Positions 3,490 through 52,020 of a stretch of 64,000 bases of DNA are shown here, piece after piece. This DNA comes from Mytilus californianus. Lineage: Eukaryota. How positions within the stretch are numbered: position 1 is the stretch's first letter; every line of letters begins with the position of its first letter. The position numbers and the translations under genes are program-made. A model generated the notes under the pieces. It had not been told where the DNA came from, made no database searches, and saw only the letters and a program-made list of their open reading frames with translations. The stretch is from positions 22,692,001-22,756,000 of the forward strand of contig NW_026262593.1 of assembly GCF_021869535.1 (NCBI RefSeq), read 5' to 3'.

Positions 3490-5265
3490 TTGGGTTCTGA
3501 TATTTTTTCGTTAAATAATCCAGAGTTCTCTAAACATACCACCGAAATTTACCCAAAGGAACTTACTTTAAATAAATCTAACATAAACAGCAGTAGTTGT
3601 CCTTTTTTAGATTTAGACATTTCAGTTTCTAAAGGGAAACTCCATACTAAAATTTACTACAAAGTGACGATTTTTCATTCACAATTGTTAAATTTCCTTT
3701 TTTAGACGGCGATGTCCCTTTGGCTCCATCATACGGTGTTTATATATCCCAACTCGTTCGTTATGCCCGTGTGTGTAGTGATGTCATTGATTTTAACGAA
3801 CGTAATCAGTGCATCACTGGTAAAACTCAGGGATTTCGTTACCATAAATTACTTAAAACATTTACTAAATTCTTTCATAAATACAAAGATTTGATTAGTA
3901 ATTTTGGCTGTACCTGTAGAAAACTGATTAAAAACGGTATTTCACATCCTAAATTTTACGGTAATATTGTACTATAAGCGCGTAAATCACTATGTGATCC
4001 GTGTAAACTCATCGAACCTATAAATAACTTATTAGTAAAGGTTATCTTATTAATGTTGTAATAAGATCTTTGAATATTGTTTACATTGGCACTTACATCG
4101 ATTTTGTCATCAACAAATTAAAACAGATTCAAATTTGTATTCTTTTCGAATGGTTTTTGGGATGTATAAATACACATCCACGTTTATTTTCTATTTAGAG
4201 ATTGCTTTATCTATATATAACATGATACATATTTATTATAAGGTTAAATTTTAACTATCCTACTGCCTGTCGATACTTTTATTTTGGCATTGCACAAGTC
4301 AAGTCTTCTTTGACTGTCCATTGCATTAAAAAACTAAATCCCTGGGATGTGTTTTAATTGATTTTAGTCCTTGATGCATGATTTTTTTTTATTATTAATT
4401 GTTTTTGGCTTTTAACTAGCTTTCAATAACTGCGAGAACTCTCAAATCGTACTTTCGTGTTAATTTGACCTGTTAACACAAATTGTAATGCATTTCTGTT
4501 ATTCAATGTTTACTTATTTTGTGTTATATCTCGTCTCACTATTTTTAATATGTACCACCTTTGATAAGTATTTAGTATGACGATAAATTTTCACTTCTGT
4601 ACTCGTTCTGTGAACAAATATATATTTATTTTGTAAAAATTGTTTCCGTACTCCTAACAACAAAATTATTATATTTCAATTTACCTGTGTACGTTATTTT
4701 ATTTAACGCCATTTTGATCCAGGTTGGAGTTGTCTTTTTGACATTGTTCCTACATCTTTTTTTTTTATTAACATTGTATCTATATTGTGTCATAGATCAA
4801 ACTTATTCGTTCAGTGTATGTTTTAAGTTACTCTTTTTTGTTTATATGTCTTTTTGATCGAGTTAAGCCATTTCAATTGATATTTTATAGTGTGTTTTTT
4901 TAAGTTGTTATGTTACACTACTGTTTCAGGTTAGGGTGAAGGTAGACGCCTGTTAAAACGTAAAAAAAACTACTGCATTTGTATGCACCTGTTCAAAGTC
5001 AGGAGCCTGTTGTTCAGTGGTTGTCGTTTGTTGGTGTGGTTCATAAGTGTTTCTCGCTTTTTATATAGATTAGACCGTTGGTTTTCCTGTTTGAATTGTT
5101 TTACACTAGTCATTTTGGGGCCCTTTATAGCTTGTTGTTCGGTGTTAGCCAAGGCTCCGTGTTGAAGGCCGTACTTTGACCTATAATTGTTTACTTTTTG
5201 TACATTGTGACTTGGATGGAGAGTTGTCTCATTGTCACTCATACCACATCTTCTTATTTATATTT
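3490..5265 (+). mobile_element. 5'-truncated Penelope-like retroelement, family A (Naiad-like): frameshifted RT C-terminus plus long 3' UTR
   Basis: Translates in pieces to DIFSLNNPEF, CPFLDLDISVSKGKLHTKIY, PSYGVYISQLVRYARVC and KFYG. The ORF ends after the RT thumb with no C-terminal GIY-YIG. It is followed by the 3' repeat seen in many copies in this window. Confidence 0.85.
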
Positions 5266-8589: not shown

Positions 8590-9450
8590 GGGCTTGACTT
8601 CATACAGGAACTTCTTAGGAAGAAAGAAAAGAAGTTAGCAGTATCCTGTAACTTTACTTTCCGCTATATAGATGATGTTCTCTCACTAAATAATTAAAAA
8701 TTTGGTGACTTTGTTGAACGTATCTATCCCATCGAACTTGAGATAAAGGATACAACAGATACAGTTAAGTCTGCCTCATATCTTGACTTACATCTAGAAA
8801 TTGACAATGAGGTTCGGTTGAAAACAAAACTTTACGACAAAAGAGATGATTTCAGCTAGCTTCCCAATTGTGAAATTTCCATTTCTATGTAGCAGCATTC
8901 CAGCAGCGCCTGCATACGGAGTTTATATCTCCCAGTTGATACGATATTCCAGGGCCTGTATTTCCTATCATGATTTCGTTGATAGAGGCTTGATGCTAAC
9001 AAGGAAGCTATTAAACCAAGAGTTCCGAGTGGTGAAGATGAAATCATCCCTTCGTAAATTTTACGAACGCCATCACGTGTTGGTTGGCCGTTATGGCATA
9101 TCTGTATTACAGATGATAGCGGATATGTTCCAATTGTCATAACTACAATCCCGTCCCCTTTTCCCCGAATGTGACCTACCGTATTAGACTTATTACCGGA
9201 TGTGTACTAACATGAGCAACACGACGGGTGCCACATGTGGAACAGGATCTGCGAACTCTTCCGGAGCACCTGAGATCACCCCCAGTTTTTGGTGGGGTTC
9301 GTGTTACTCAGTCTTTAGTTTTCTATATTGTATTTTGTGTACTGTTGTTTGTCTGTTTGTCATTTTCTTTATTGGCCATGGCGTTGTCAGTTTATTTTCG
9401 ACTTATGAGTTTGGATGTCCCTTTGATATCTTTCGCCTCTCTCTTCTGTA
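8590..9450 (+). mobile_element. 5'-truncated Penelope-like retroelement, family B: RT catalytic region plus 3' UTR
   Basis: FRYIDDVLSLNN (YIDD motif), SASYLDLHLEID..LKTKLYDKRDDFS, APAYGVYISQLIRYSRAC..KSSLRKFY. Stops and frameshifts present. Confidence 0.9.
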
Positions 9451-31996: not shown

Positions 31997-33229
31997 TATA
32001 AAAATAAAGAGATAAGGTATGATTGCCAATGAGACAACTATCCACCAAAGTTTAAATGAAGTGGATGTAAGCAATTATAGGCAACCGGACGGCCTTCAAT
32101 AATGAGAAAAACCCATACTGTATGGTCGTCTATAAAAGGCCCCGACATGAAAAATGTGAAACAATTCAATTGAGAAAACTAACGGCCTAATTTATAACAA
32201 AACAATTTACGAAAAACAAATATGACAGACATGAACCAACGACAACCACTGAACTTAAGGTTCCTGACTATGGACCGGCACGTACAGAATGTGGCGAGGT
32301 TAAACATGTTTGTGAGCGCTCAACCCTCCCCCTTACCTGGGACAGTGATGTAACAGTACAATATAAGCACAAACTATAAAAATCAGTTGAAAAAGGCTTA
32401 ACTCATCAGATGGATACAAATAGAAATACATCTAACAAAACCACAGAGTGGACGTAGACGGGTACTTATACATCCCCACGTCAAAAAGACACTGAGTAAA
32501 GATCTGAGAGTACTCGCAGTTACTGGCAGCTAGTTCAAAGCCAATAACAACTAATTAAAAAAATAATGTATCTAAGACTAACATATCAATCAGTACACAT
32601 CCAACATCCAATGGATTTAGTGTAAAGACGTCATTAACAGTGATCTTGTGCAATGTTAAGATATAGGTATCAACAGTTTGTAGTACCGTGAAAGTAAATA
32701 TATGTACTATTTAGTATGGTTTTAATTTACTGATAACAAAATCAATATTTATACCAATAAAAACAATATTTAAAGATTTAATTACAGTGTTGAATAGGTA
32801 ATCTTTTAGAATAAATTTATTTAAAGGATTGATAAGTTTACCCGGATCGTTTCTAAATTTCCGGGCTCGGTTTACAACATCTACGTAAAATTTAGGATGT
32901 GCTATACCGTTTGAAATAAGTTTTCTACAGGTACAGCCAAACTTGCAGACCAAATCTTAGTATCTATATCTATGGAAGAATTTAGTAAAGGTTTTAAGTA
33001 ATTTGTGGTAACGAAATTCCTCACTTAATAATTTACTAGTAATACAAAGAATACGCTCATCGAAATTCAAAGCGTCACTACAGACATGAGCATAGTGAAC
33101 GAGTTGGGATATATAAACACCGTAAGACGGTGACAAAGGAACATCACCGTTAAAAAAGGGAAAATTAACAATAGAGAAAGAAAAATCATCCCTTTTGTCG
33201 TAAATGTTTGTGGATAGTTTACTTGTCAT
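31997..33229 (-). mobile_element. 5'-truncated Penelope-like retroelement, family A (Naiad-like): RT C-terminus plus 3' UTR
   Basis: TNIYDKRDDFSFSIVNFPF..PSYGVYISQLVHYAHVC..KFGCTCRKL..HPKFY, with one TAA nonsense codon at ~32957. ORF stop at 32711, then a ~700-bp conserved 3' region. Confidence 0.9.
32576..32641 (-). promoter_or_regulatory. Candidate eukaryotic form-2 SECIS element in the retroelement 3' UTR
   Basis: Minus strand: AUGAC GUCUUUACAC UAAA UCCA-UUGGAUGU-UGGA U GUGUACUGAU UGAU. It has the AUGA...GA quartet, a 10-bp helix II (8 pairs), unpaired AAA and an apical mini-stem. Helix I is ACUG/UAGU. Confidence 0.7.
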
Positions 33230-43910: not shown

Positions 43911-44669
43911 CCCCCCCCAAAAAAATCATTTGGAGTTCAAAATTTGAAAGGCACTATGTTTTGAATTGCCATATTAACTTAGTAGCAAAATAATTATCAC
44001 ATAGTATAAAAGGATAATTGCAAGAACATTTCTGACTGTTACACAGTATATGGTTGATTAGAAGTTAAAAAGTGTATCGTACAGTCTATATTCTGTCTAT
44101 GGTCACAGTTGTGAGCTTGTAATTTTCTTCCACGAATCATTTAACTCAGTTTGTGATGCTAGACAAAGTGTTGCGGTTTTTAAGCTGTTATTAAAAAAAT
44201 AAGATGTAGAGACAACGTTCCACCAGAGACAATATGATGTAGATGTCAGCAATAAGAAAATCCCATACACATATAAAGCTATAAAAGGCCCCGGATGACT
44301 AATGTAAAACAATTCAAATCAAGTTTAGTGTTTATGGTTAAAAAAGGAATAAATTAAAGACCTTATCATTCTATTTTTCCTATAGTAAATCAGTGGGCAT
44401 CTTCTGAAGTATCTGTTTGCAATACGACATTATTTTTACTATTTAATTGAGAGCAATTATAAGATCGTGACAAAGGCAATAACACATTAAATTGTCTGTT
44501 GAAGTCTAACCGTTCAAAATAGATAAGATGCCAAACAAATTATTTACCAAATTTTTATTACGCTATGAAATTTGCAATTATTCTTAACATCCTACAATGA
44601 AGCAATATTTGCCTTTATTTCTTTCTAATGGCTTTTTTTTTATTAGTCGGTAGACTGCGCATAGAGAGA

Positions 44670-46575
44670 GTTTGACTAGGATTGGCAGTTTACCTGCCGA
44701 TGGTCGGTGGTTCCACGCCTGTCATTCGGTATATCGAGAAAAATGATCGTGAAAGAATACCTAACGGTGGTCAAGCATGCGATCGGATCGTGAATGTAAT
44801 TAATTGTAATTCTACTTCAAAATCTGTGAAAAATCTGCTGTATTTTCAATACGCGGAGCAAATCCGGAAAAAAAATATGTCTGTCAAAATGATTCAACTT
44901 TCTCTATAATAATGTGCAATAAGATAAAGAAAATATGCAGTACTTTATGAGAAAACACAAAAGGCGCAACACAAGTCTATGGGATTCATTAAAAAAACAC
45001 ACATTTTGTACCTATAATGGTCACAATCCAATATATAATGTTATTTTTGAAACTGAATCTTTGGTGTGTCAGATAGTACAGTAAAATAAAAGGTTTTATT
45101 TTCCTTTATACCGTTTATTCTATTTTTGAAAACATTGCATTTTGTTGATTTTTCATCCAAACTGATCGTGAAAGATCGTTCAACGCATTCTATTGATCGT
45201 GAAAGACAACGTGACCACACGGGCGCAGGACGTTTGCTCTGTTTTACCTGTAACACTAAAGGTCATTCCGCTTCAAACACTATGGGCATTTGCGCTTTAG
45301 ACTTTGATGCACCTGTACAAAATTGACAAGAAATTTCGCTTTTTACCTATAACAGTTTACCTGTAATCTTAGAAAATTTACCAAAGTCACGGAATGATAT
45401 ACATACTTTCTTTGAAAGTTCTTCCGAACAAACGACAAAATCAAAAAAATTATTCGGGTAAACCAGACATGTAATAAAAAATATAGTATACGTTTCTAGG
45501 TTTAACGATAGAGAAAACGAAACTTTTATGACTGGAACATTAAAATTTTGACCGAATTCTTCAAATAGCTTTTTAATTAGTGGATTTTAAATTGGAAACT
45601 ACATTCTTTTTGTGTCCATTCTGTCCCATTTCTATACCACACAAACGTCCCACGTCGGACAAGACTTAAGAATCAGAAAACAATATGTTTTTACCAATTG
45701 ATATACATTTGTACTTGCAACTAGTTGAAGCGTGTCATTATTTTAATAAGAACGAACATTACTGCTTTCATTTTTTTCACATTTTTTTTTATTTCAACAC
45801 TTTTCCTTAAAAGTTATTAAAATAACTAAAAACGTGTCTAGATATGTTATCGAAGATTTACAAGATAAGAGGATCTTCAGGAGCGTAAAGTGTGGTAAAG
45901 TAAAAGTAAATATGTATCTATAATGCTTAATGCATCCGCTCTGGAAATATATGCATATGTACGCCTTTTTTTGTAAGGGTTGTTACTTTCAGTTATATAG
46001 TGTGTAGTTGGTGTGTACATTGTATGGCAATATTGGCTAATTTATTGTTTATTTCGTAGCTGCGCTGACATAAACTAAAAAGGTACCAAAATAAGATTAT
46101 TTTACTTGATTGTTTGATCAGTCTGTTCACAATAGCTATACGTCATTGTACCCAACTTAGTGGGGAAATTACCAATCAACATACCTCAATTGTGCATGAT
46201 GCCCAGCTTAAACTGTAATTTAGCCGATTAAGTTCTATTCTCAATCTTAAATTTGTATGAGATACTGATCATAATGTTGAACCATTTTGACAGACAGTTT
46301 TATTTTTTAGTAAATTTTCCGTATAATTCATTAAATTAGATTAGCAGTTGACCTTGCAAATATCTTCTCGATAATATTTCATTCACGATCCTATACCAGA
46401 GCTTTCCCGATCCAATCGCAATACTTGACCACCGTTAGGTATTCTTTCTCGATATACCGAATGACACCCGTGGGTTCTCTCCAGGCACTCCGGTTTCCTC
46501 CACCAATAAAAATTGACCGCCACGAAATAGTCAATAGTACTGAAAAGGGCGTTAAACACCTATCAATCGATTCAG
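44670..46575 (+). mobile_element. SINE copy split by a DNA transposon (left part 44670-44713, right part 46473-46575)
   Basis: ttgactaggattggcagtttacctgccgatggtcggtggttc joins tctccaggcactccggtttcctccaccaataaaaattgaccgccacg...gcgttaaacacc to rebuild the SINE core. Confidence 0.8.
44714..46472. mobile_element. Non-autonomous TIR DNA transposon with CAC...GTG termini and 5-bp TSD (Transib/RAG-like signature)
   Basis: Left end CACGCCTGTCATTCGGTATATCGAGAA...AGAATACCTAACGGTGGTCAAG; right end (reverse complement) CACGGGTGTCATTCGGTATATCGAGAAAGAATACCTAACGGTGGTCAAG. GGTTC is duplicated at 44709-44713 and 46473-46477. No transposase ORF. The superfamily assignment is an inference. Confidence 0.8.
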
Positions 46576-51199: not shown

Positions 51200-52020
51200 G
51201 GAGGTACTAAAATATGTTCACCTGAACTTTGATTATCCTGCGATAAAACCTTGCTTAAAAGCAGTGTCCGTTCGGGGAGTATAAAAATGTAGCATCGTCC
51301 GTTCTGAATGGGAAAATTAGAATTCAAACTTCGTGCAAGGAAAGTACCACGATCTCTGCACATTAAAAAACACTTAAGTTTGCAACAACTATTCATAGGT
51401 GGCCTGTTGCAAACACAAATTTTGCCCCATGGTAATTATAGTATCGTTTCCCCCGTTAGGTCTAAAGAGGGGCGAAAGATACCAGAGGGATATTCAAACT
51501 CATAAATCGAAAATAAACTGACAACGTCATGGCTAAAAAAGAAACAGACAAACAGACAAACAATAGTACACAAAACACAAAAAAAACTAAGCAACACGAA
51601 CCCCACCAAAACTGGGGGTGATCTCAGGTGCTCCGGAAGGGTAAGCAGATCCTGCTCCACATGTGGCACCCTTCGTGTTGCTCATGTTAGTACAAACCCG
51701 GTTAATAGTCCAATTCGGTAGGTCACATTCGACATGATTCGTGAAAAGGGAACGGGATTGTAGTTACGACATCAGGAACATATCCGCTATCATCTGTGAA
51801 ACGGATATTCCATAACGGTCAACCAACTCGTGATGGCGTCCGGTTAATTTACGAAGGGATGATTTCAACGTCACCATTTGGAACTCTTGGTTTAATAGCT
51901 TCTTTGTGAGCAGCAACCCTCTATCAAGGAAATCATGATAGGAAATACAAGCCCGGGGAGCTAATTTCTCGCCCTTCATCCCTATCGACTAATTTGACAG
52001 AACCTACCTATTGAAATTAT
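51200..52020 (+). mobile_element. SINE-like repeat interrupted by the family B element at 51455-51955
   Basis: Body similar to 40990-41120; acctacctattg tail resumes at ~52000. Confidence 0.45.
51455..51955 (-). mobile_element. Penelope-like family B, 5'-truncated copy nested in a SINE
   Basis: RACISYHDFLDRGLLLTKKLLNQEF..SSLRK..HHELVDRYG, followed by the same 3' UTR as 9145-9450. Confidence 0.85.

What the first reader, a model, noticed from the sequence alone, without database searches (positions are those of the whole stretch)
44714..46472. CAC-ended, 5-bp-TSD transposon (Transib/RAG-like signature) with asymmetric TIRs, inserted in a SINE
Seen: ~80-bp inverted repeats 1.76 kb apart. The split SINE gives an unambiguous empty site (ggtcggtGGTTCtctcc), so the element is either CACG...CGTG with a 5-bp GGTTC TSD or CCACG...CGTGG with a 3-bp GTT TSD. 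The left TIR has 13 extra nt (AAATGATCGTGAA) between the terminal block and the conserved AGAATACCTAACGGTGGTCAAG block, giving spacers of 33 vs 20 nt after the first 7 nt. Known: CAC termini with GC-rich 5-bp TSDs characterise Transib and RAG-like transposons, and RAG-like transposons have been reported in bivalves (Martin et al. 2020, from memory). Inference: this is a non-autonomous derivative of a Transib/RAG-like family. If the spacer asymmetry is fixed in the family, it would recall 12/23-type end asymmetry.
Basis: partly seen in the sequence, partly recalled or inferred. Interest (0 to 1): 0.72.

Follow-up and report, generated by a model that had tools for sequence, protein, structure and literature searches.

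The report
Gene-less mussel transposon, 5-bp duplication
This is one worn, internally deleted copy of a gene-less cut-and-paste transposon present in at least 500 copies in a mussel genome; its CAC ends and 5-base target duplication are real, but the "12/23-like" end asymmetry is a private deletion and no transposase, RAG-like or other, could be tied to it.

Summary
Window 44714-46472 is a 1,759-bp element with terminal inverted repeats. It sits in a 5'-truncated tRNA-derived SINE, and intact SINE copies give the empty site.

Other copies settle the ends: CACGG...CCGTG with an exact 5-bp duplication (18 of 23 pairs perfect). The base before CAC varies, so the 3-bp/CCACG reading is out.

The family is abundant: 1,062 ends match the terminal 28-mer with up to 2 mismatches. 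Its consensus is 2.66 kb, has no ORF over 98 aa, and copies are 93-96% like it.

The 13-nt left/right asymmetry is private. 60 of 68 ends carry the block, on both sides. The window's right end lost it, and its left end lost another 22 nt. Both losses lie between repeats of GATCGTGAA, a motif present 11 times near the ends.

I found no transposase. All longer copies checked, including an 18.7-kb one, are nested insertions or adjacent copies. The RAG1 Pfam model finds nothing significant in the genome, and the ends do not fit the published protostome RAG-like consensus. Targets are AT-rich, unlike classical Transib.

The superfamily stays open: Transib/CMC-type is favoured, hAT5 is a real rival. 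This scan has already met this kind of element many times in this genome.

The parts
44670..44713 (+). 5' part of a 5'-truncated tRNA-derived SINE copy, the host of the insertion; it ends with TSD copy 1
   Evidence: Alignment with 11 other SINE copies
44709..44713 (.). Target site duplication, copy 1 (GGTTC)
   Evidence: intact SINE copies carry a single GGTTC
44714..44800 (+). Left terminal inverted repeat. It starts CACGCCT (family consensus CACGGCT) and lacks 22 nt of the consensus TIR (consensus 70-91, one motif unit)
44742..44754 (+). The 13-nt block AATGATCGTGAAA, the 'extra' nt of the finding. It holds the outermost GATCGTGAA motif and is normal for the family at both ends
   Evidence: 60 of 68 distinct ends carry it
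44745..44753 (+). GATCGTGAA motif copy, a putative transposase-binding site. Further + strand copies lie at 44786-44794, 45164-45172 and 45195-45203
   Evidence: 11 exact copies in the consensus against 0.5 expected; family D1
44801..46375 (.). Non-coding interior with two internal deletions relative to the 2.66-kb family consensus. Consensus 945-1284 is lost near window 45625, and consensus 1904-2436 is lost near window 46250-46262
   Evidence: no ORF of note
46382..46390 (-). GATCGTGAA motif copy in the right TIR; a degenerate copy GATCGGGAA lies at 46404-46412
46376..46472 (-). Right terminal inverted repeat (CACGGGT... read inward). It lacks the 13-nt block, so it has lost its outermost motif copy
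46473..46477 (.). Target site duplication, copy 2 (GGTTC)
46473..46575 (+). 3' part of the split SINE, running to its AATC-type tail
   Evidence: very high contig depth at 46475-46561 in all four runs

Best explanation
The element is a decayed copy of a high-copy, gene-less (non-autonomous) cut-and-paste DNA transposon family of a Mytilus-like mussel. A full family member is about 2.66 kb. Its ends read CACGGCTGTCATTCGG on the left and CACGGGTGTCATTCGG on the right. Its imperfect TIRs are about 110 bp long, and each holds three copies of GATCGTGAA, with two or three further copies about 470-520 bp inside each end. A transposase supplied in trans would bind these motifs, cut exactly at the CAC ends, and insert the element with a 5-bp staggered cut. 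It prefers AT-rich 5-mers, roughly c|WWWWW|g. Shown here: the family, its ends, the exact 5-bp TSD, the motif arrays, the lack of any gene, and the private nature of the asymmetry. Inferred: the enzyme. I take a Transib-type or, more broadly, a CMC/Transib-clade DDE transposase as the single most likely mover (about 45%). The window copy entered an old SINE. It then lost two interior blocks, 22 nt of the left TIR and 13 nt of the right TIR, the TIR losses by slippage between motif repeats. It is probably no longer mobile.
For: Family size: the terminal 28-mer with up to 2 mismatches hits 528 forward and 534 reverse places, with 0 for the control. There are 231 perfect ends and 2,360 first-look candidates for the whole element. 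TSD: 18 of 23 end pairs have a perfect 5-bp duplication, none in any other register, and the remaining 5 differ by 1-2 bases. The base before CAC is T 49%, A 35%, C 9%, G 6%. The empty site is confirmed in intact SINE copies. No gene: the 2,663-bp consensus of 17 copies has no ORF over 98 aa, and copies are 93-96% identical to it. Motif: 11 exact GATCGTGAA in the consensus against 0.5 by chance, arranged symmetrically. CAC...GTG ends with a 5-bp TSD are the Transib hallmarks (PMC1131882). The CMC/Transib clade shares CA..TG ends and 2-5 bp TSDs (PMC12730594).
Against: No transposase was found. Every pair of perfect ends up to 30 kb apart on the contigs listed was 284 bp to 5.2 kb, or two adjacent copies (L072), or an 18.7-kb copy filled with a nested LINE and other repeats. 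The twin of that 18.7-kb copy is a segmental duplicate with identical flanks. Targets are AT-rich (TSD 19% GC against 33% in the flanks), whereas classical Transib and RAG prefer GC-rich sites (PMC1131882). The heptamer CACGGCT/CACGGGT matches CACAATG only at CAC plus one or two positions. A survey of mollusc genomes found a single Transib ORF (PMC10294476). Short subterminal repeats and AT-rich targets are more typical of hAT.
Confidence: 0.45

Rival explanations
1. It is a non-autonomous hAT5-type element. hAT5 is a documented animal hAT lineage that makes 5-bp instead of 8-bp TSDs. Its transposase would bind the short subterminal repeats and insert into AT-rich DNA.
For: hAT5 with 5-bp TSDs is documented (Kapitonov & Jurka 2007, cited in PMC12730594). 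hAT is the second richest DDE superfamily in bivalves (PMC10294476). The genome holds at least 912 candidate hAT dimerisation-domain places. AT-rich targets and arrays of a short subterminal motif are classic hAT traits. PMC1131882 itself uses AT-rich targets to tell hAT from Transib. Positions 2 (A) and 5 (G) of CACGG fit the hAT end pattern YARNG; that pattern is from my own knowledge.
Against: The third base is C, not the R of YARNG. The TIRs, at about 110 bp, are long for hAT. None of the 150 best hAT hits lies within 30 kb of any listed family end, but this is a weak negative because only a fraction of ends and hAT copies are listed.
Confidence: 0.3
2. It is moved by some other or still undescribed transposase lineage. 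In that case CAC plus 5 bp is a look-alike of the Transib signature.
For: The genome holds P-like transposase genes with long open frames: PF21787 gives 51 places with open frames up to 893 aa. Another note (s1-287965) reports CAC...GTG ends on a Sola2 element, so CAC ends are not specific here.
Against: No P-like hit lies near a listed family end. Two P-like loci that I read (L073, L074) hold no family sequence. Known P elements make 7-8 bp TSDs (my own knowledge).
Confidence: 0.2
3. It is a non-autonomous RAG-like (RAGL) transposon, mobilised by a RAG1L/RAG2L pair as in oysters, with 12/23-type asymmetric ends.
For: CAC ends and a 5-bp TSD. RAGL transposons exist in some bivalves (PMC7204232).
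Against: The ends do not fit the protostome RAGL consensus CACTWMCAAACKTYKBB: positions 4-10 read GGCTGTC and there is no AAA at 8-10. PF12940 finds nothing significant in the 1.65-Gb genome; the best match has E 2.7. The spacer asymmetry is private to this copy.
Confidence: 0.03

Closest known systems
Non-autonomous Transib elements (e.g. the Transib-N families of insects; Kapitonov & Jurka 2005, PMC1131882)
   Same: 5'-CAC...GTG-3' ends, a strictly 5-bp TSD, gene-less multi-copy derivatives, and a preferred target with flanking c...g (compare cCASTGg in Transib-N1_AG).
   Different: The target 5-mer is AT-rich instead of GC-rich. The heptamer is CACGGCT/CACGGGT rather than CACAATG, and no convincing nonamer sits at 12 or 23 bp. 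The TIRs are about 110 bp long and built around a repeated 9-mer. No Transib transposase was found in the genome.
CACTA/EnSpm and the wider CMC/Transib ('CMCT') clade (Yuan & Wessler 2011; Kojima 2025, PMC12730594)
   Same: CA(C)...TG ends and arrays of a short subterminal repeat that is presumably bound by the transposase. The TSD falls within the clade's 2-5 bp range.
   Different: CACTA, Mirage and Chapaev make 2-4 bp TSDs, while this family makes exactly 5. The ends read CACGG, not CACTA.
hAT5 group of hAT transposons (Kapitonov & Jurka 2007, Repbase Reports, as cited in PMC12730594)
   Same: A 5-bp TSD, AT-rich targets and short subterminal repeats. hAT is abundant in bivalves.
   Different: The end CACGG departs from YARNG at position 3. 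The TIRs are long. No hAT gene was found between family ends.
Protostome RAG-like (RAGL) transposons (Martin et al. 2020, PMC7204232)
   Same: CAC ends, a 5-bp TSD and occurrence in bivalves.
   Different: The TIR consensus is not matched. There is no RAG1 Pfam signal in this genome and no fixed end asymmetry.

Membership tests
Non-autonomous class II (TIR) DNA transposon | Terminal inverted repeats, a TSD of fixed length, many dispersed copies, and no transposase gene | tested here: met
Transib superfamily | 5-bp target site duplication | tested here: met
   18 of 23 pairs are perfect at 5 bp and none in another register. The empty site is seen in intact SINE copies.
Transib superfamily | 5'-CAC...GTG-3' termini | tested here: met
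   The consensus ends are CACGGCT and CACGGGT, and the preceding base varies.
Transib superfamily | RSS-like 38-bp end: heptamer CACAATG, a 23-bp (or 12-bp) spacer, and an A-rich nonamer | tested here: inconclusive
   Only CAC plus one or two heptamer positions match. An A-rich run AGAAAAATG sits after a 16-bp spacer, not 12 or 23 (sequence against PMC1131882).
Transib superfamily | [quoted passage not shown] | tested here: not met
   TSD GC is 19% against 33% in the next 20 nt, over 65 ends.
Transib superfamily | Autonomous copies encode a roughly 700-aa Transib/RAG1-core-like DDE transposase | tested here: inconclusive
   No coding copy was found among the pairs of perfect ends. No Transib profile was available, and PF12940 is silent.
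RAG-like (RAGL) transposons | TIR consensus CACTWMCAAACKTYKBB with AAA at positions 8-10 | tested here: not met
   The ends read CACGGCTGTCATTCGGT.
RAG-like (RAGL) transposons | A convergent RAG1L-RAG2L gene pair | tested here: not met
   PF12940 over the whole genome gives a best E of 2.7. Caveat: the control genomes were silent too.
RSS-type 12/23 end asymmetry | Spacer lengths that differ between left and right ends and are fixed in the family | tested here: not met
   The offset of the AATACC block is 41-43 nt in 60 of 68 ends on both sides. The short form occurs twice, on opposite end types.
CACTA/EnSpm, Mirage, Chapaev (CMC) | 2-4 bp TSD | tested here: not met
   The TSD is exactly 5 bp.
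hAT (classical) | 8-bp TSD and YARNG ends | tested here: not met
   The TSD is 5 bp and the ends read CACGG.
hAT5 | 5-bp TSD together with a hAT transposase (BED finger, RNase H fold, hAT dimerisation domain) | tested here: inconclusive
   The TSD criterion is met. No hAT domain was found near the listed ends, but coverage was partial.
P superfamily | 7-8 bp TSD and a THAP/P-type transposase | tested here: not met
   The TSD is 5 bp. No PF21787 hit lies near the listed ends, and the P-like loci L073/L074 lack family sequence.

The most novel reading that the evidence does not exclude
This family, and the many sibling CAC-ended, 5-bp-TSD, gene-less families that the scan keeps meeting in this mussel genome, may all be driven by one undescribed transposase lineage of the RAG1/Transib/CMC fold. 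That lineage would prefer AT-rich c|WWWWW|g targets and would reside in large or intron-rich elements that ORF-based surveys of molluscs have missed.
Probability: 0.15. Interest if true: 0.55.

Novelty: new member of a known kind. Interest (0 to 1): 0.25.

Why it matters
As it stands, this is routine repeat annotation: one more non-autonomous DNA transposon family in a repeat-rich bivalve genome. Two results have some value.

First, the tempting link to V(D)J 12/23 asymmetry is removed by direct counting.

Second, the family is a clean example of a mismatch. Ends and TSD say "Transib", while target composition and subterminal repeats say "hAT". No transposase is visible, and published surveys report almost no Transib genes in molluscs. 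Finding the enzyme for these abundant families would show whether a RAG1-relative has been active on a large scale in a protostome, or whether CAC ends plus a 5-bp TSD is an unreliable diagnostic.

Tried and rejected
1. The 3-bp TSD with CCACG ends is rejected. The base before CAC varies and 5 bp is the only register that duplicates.

2. A family-fixed spacer asymmetry is rejected. The only fixed left/right differences are single bases, for example position 6, which is C on the left in 20 of 23 copies and G on the right in 18 of 23.

3. Search for the parent:
- The 2.1-3.2 kb copies and their consensus have no ORF.
- Longer TSD-flanked copies L049 (4,992 bp) and L050 (5,229 bp) hold other repeats and a minisatellite.
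- L072 (6.8 kb) is two adjacent copies.
- The 18.7-kb copy L070+L071 (TSD TTAAA) holds a nested LINE (RVT_1, zf-RVT) and no transposase. Its twin, 22.8 Mb away, has identical flanks, so it is a segmental duplicate.
- One unpaired end (L069) has no partner within 10 kb.

4. A conserved peptide fragment inside two long copies turned out to be a ubiquitous unrelated repeat, also present in flanks and elsewhere in the window.

5. PF12940 (RAG1) over the genome gave nothing significant.

6. P-like (PF21787) and hAT (PF05699) hits were cross-checked by coordinates against about 200 listed ends. None lay within 30 kb.

7. An exact scan of metagenome contigs for the terminal 25-mer gave 0 matches.

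8. Rfam on the region gave nothing meaningful. ARAGORN found no tRNA in the SINE copies.

I did not try to read those letters by any other tool.

10. The skip-the-element joints in the contig lay-out come from other SINE copies and are not evidence of an empty allele.

Full report
**Observation**

Three blocks of inverted repeat lie 1.6-1.7 kb apart:
- 44713-44741 / 46445-46473, 29 nt, 93% complementary
- 44746-44778 / 46421-46453, 33 nt, 94%
- 44782-44800 / 46376-46394, 19 nt, 89%

The terminal 21-mer occurs exactly twice in the window, against 0 expected by chance. GGTTC flanks both ends. The left arm carries 13 nt (44742-44754, AATGATCGTGAAA) that the right arm lacks.

The host repeat is a tRNA-derived SINE with A and B boxes and an (AATC)n tail, and it is 5'-truncated in the window. 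Ten other copies read ...GGTCGGTGGTTC|TCTCCGGG... without interruption and with a single GGTTC. The empty site is therefore real.

**The family**

A search of the window's own 1.65-Gb genome with the whole element gave 2,360 first-look candidates. The 40 that were scored matched at 83-91% identity.

The terminal 28-mer CACGGNTGTCATTCGGTATATCGAGAAA, with up to 2 mismatches, occurs 528 times forward and 534 times in reverse. The reversed control pattern occurs 0 times. Of these ends, 231 are perfect. There are thus at least about 500 copies.

Seventeen full copies align to a 2,663-bp consensus with 33% GC and no ORF over 98 aa. Individual copies are 93-96% identical to it. Relative to the consensus, the window copy is 93.7% identical and lacks positions 945-1284 and 1904-2436.

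**Ends and target duplication**

Across 23 end pairs (L033 left out as a duplicate of L032), the five bases before CAC equal the five bases after GTG in 18. The other five pairs differ by one or two bases, and no other register gives any match. The base before CAC is T 49%, A 35%, C 9%, G 6%.

The element therefore ends CACGG...CCGTG and makes a 5-bp duplication. The alternative of CCACG ends with a 3-bp duplication is excluded.

The duplicated 5-mer is AT-rich: 19% GC, against 33% in the neighbouring 20 nt. C is enriched at position -6 (42%), which suggests a target of roughly c|WWWWW|g.

**The asymmetry**

In 60 of 68 distinct ends, left and right alike, the AATACCTAACGGTGG block starts 41-43 nt from the tip. 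That is the long form, with the 13 nt present. Only two ends have the short form (29 nt): the right end of the window copy and the left end of an unrelated copy (L012/L037).

The 13 nt lie between two near-repeats, ATCGAGAAAG and ATCGTGAAAG. The loss is most simply replication slippage, and it has happened independently at either end. The window's left TIR has also lost 22 nt (consensus 70-91) between two GGATCGTGAA repeats.

So the asymmetry is private to this copy and bears no relation to a 12/23 rule. The only family-wide left/right differences are single bases. At position 6, for example, C is on the left in 20 of 23 copies and G is on the right in 18 of 23.

**Anatomy that bears on mechanism**

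The 9-mer GATCGTGAA occurs 11 times exactly in the consensus, against 0.5 expected:
- at positions 32, 74 and 96 of each TIR
- two more times at 473 and 504 on the left
- three more times at the mirror position on the right, all pointing inward

This is the layout of transposase-binding sites in elements that are moved in trans. The 13-nt loss removes the outermost site of the window's right end.

**Search for the enzyme**

I listed the perfect ends: the first 100 of 127 C-type ends and 100 of 104 G/A/T-type ends. I then paired all facing ends up to 30 kb apart. The sizes ran from 284 bp to 5.2 kb, with three larger cases:
- L049 (4,992 bp, TSD ATTTG) and L050 (5,229 bp, TSD AGAAT) are family ends around other repeats and a minisatellite.
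- L072 (6.8 kb) is two adjacent copies.
- C99:49623126-49641794 (18,669 bp, perfect TSD TTAAA) has family ends but holds a nested LINE (RVT_1 and zf-RVT) and other repeats. It has no transposase.

A second 18.7-kb pair, 22.8 Mb away on the same contig, has identical flanks and is a segmental duplicate.

The Pfam RAG1 model finds nothing significant in the genome; the best match has E 2.7. The controls did not ring either, so this argues only against RAG1-like genes and says little about Transib proper.

Neither the 51 P-like places (PF21787) nor the 150 best hAT places (PF05699) lie within 30 kb of any listed family end. Two P-like loci that I read contain no family sequence. The terminal 25-mer is absent from the metagenome contigs.

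An exhaustive walk from every unpaired end was therefore not possible.

**Age and distribution**

Assembled contigs of public runs bridge the left junction (44300-44743) without a difference in two samples of organism A from two studies. One of these may be the source sample. In a sample labelled organism B, a contig bridges 44300-44756 with 5 differences. In organism C, the matching contig leaves the window sequence at 44669, before the SINE.

Together with 6% divergence from the consensus, this makes the insertion old and shared between two species labels, not recent. Joints that skip the element come from other SINE copies and do not show an empty allele.

**Comparison with known families**

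CAC...GTG ends with a strict 5-bp duplication are the hallmarks of Transib (PMC1131882). The wider CMC/Transib clade shares CA..TG ends and 2-5 bp duplications (PMC12730594).

Three points count against a simple Transib call:
- Classical Transib and RAG insert into GC-rich sites. PMC1131882 uses AT-rich targets as a mark of hAT.
- The 38-bp heptamer-spacer-nonamer pattern is not recognisable.
- A survey of mollusc genomes found one Transib ORF in all (PMC10294476).

The claim that 5 bp is unique to Transib is outdated. hAT5 elements, an animal hAT lineage, also make 5-bp duplications (cited in PMC12730594), and hAT is abundant in bivalves. The end CACGG departs from the usual hAT YARNG at position 3; that pattern is from my own knowledge.

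The protostome RAG-like consensus CACTWMCAAACKTYKBB (PMC7204232) is not matched.

**Earlier notes of this scan**

These AI notes are mostly unchecked. They report many CAC-ended, 5-bp-TSD, gene-less families in this same genome whose enzyme was not found. One family was traced to a P-like enzyme. There are also RAG1-fold transposase genes in 17-25 kb elements. I used them as leads only, and none could be tied to this family.

**Verdict**

This is a real, ordinary, non-autonomous DNA transposon copy. The 5-bp TSD and CAC ends are confirmed. The 12/23-like asymmetry is refuted.

The superfamily is unresolved. My estimates are:
- Transib/CMC-type: about 45%
- hAT5: about 30%
- another or a new lineage: about 20%
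- RAG-like: about 3%

It is a new member of a known kind and of low interest, unless the missing enzyme turns out to be a RAG1 relative.

Noticed in passing
window 3666-3944, 8876-9136, 32903-33205, 51782-51952; also L036:51-299, L028:578-872, L010:3451-3729: A decayed coding fragment (...YISQLxRYxRxCxxxxxFxxRxxxLxxKLLxQGF...) recurs at four places in the window and in the flanks of many unrelated loci. It is a very abundant repeat with no Pfam match and of unknown origin.
   Followed up: partly
L021:2493-3641 (-), G000:C121 near 113826400: A family copy ends 13 bp from the end of an intact 383-aa open frame that matches galactosyltransferase (PF01762, E 2e-45). The insertion lies just past the stop of a host-gene exon.
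   Followed up: partly
G000:C90:8120372, 8122245, 8124118, 8125991 (all + strand): Four perfect family ends lie in the same orientation at an exact 1,873-bp spacing. This looks like a tandem array built from a truncated copy.
   Followed up: no
G000:C110:41562003, 41567710, 41573418: Three perfect right-type ends lie 5,707-5,708 bp apart in the same orientation. This suggests a tandem duplication of a 5.7-kb unit that contains a family copy.
   Followed up: no
G000:C99:49623126-49641794 and C99:72418006-72436772: The same 18.7-kb insertion, with identical 40-bp flanks on both sides, is present twice 22.8 Mb apart on one contig. It is a large segmental duplication or an assembly duplication.
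   Followed up: partly
L073 (G000:C35:14206400-14216399) and L074 (G000:C110:39505943-39515942): Two loci with a P-element-like transposase domain are 98-98.6% identical over almost all of their 10 kb. Each carries three open frames of 390-490 aa. This is a young repeat longer than 10 kb, and at least five near-identical transposase hits exist genome-wide.
   Followed up: partly
G000:C99:25620842-25621125: A pair of perfect family ends faces each other only 284 bp apart, a miniature (MITE-sized) derivative of the family.
   Followed up: no
window 44300-44669 against run X10 (organism C): The contig of organism C follows the window with 14 differences up to 44669. It then continues with unlike sequence, so the SINE, and with it the transposon, may be absent at this locus in that species.
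   Followed up: no
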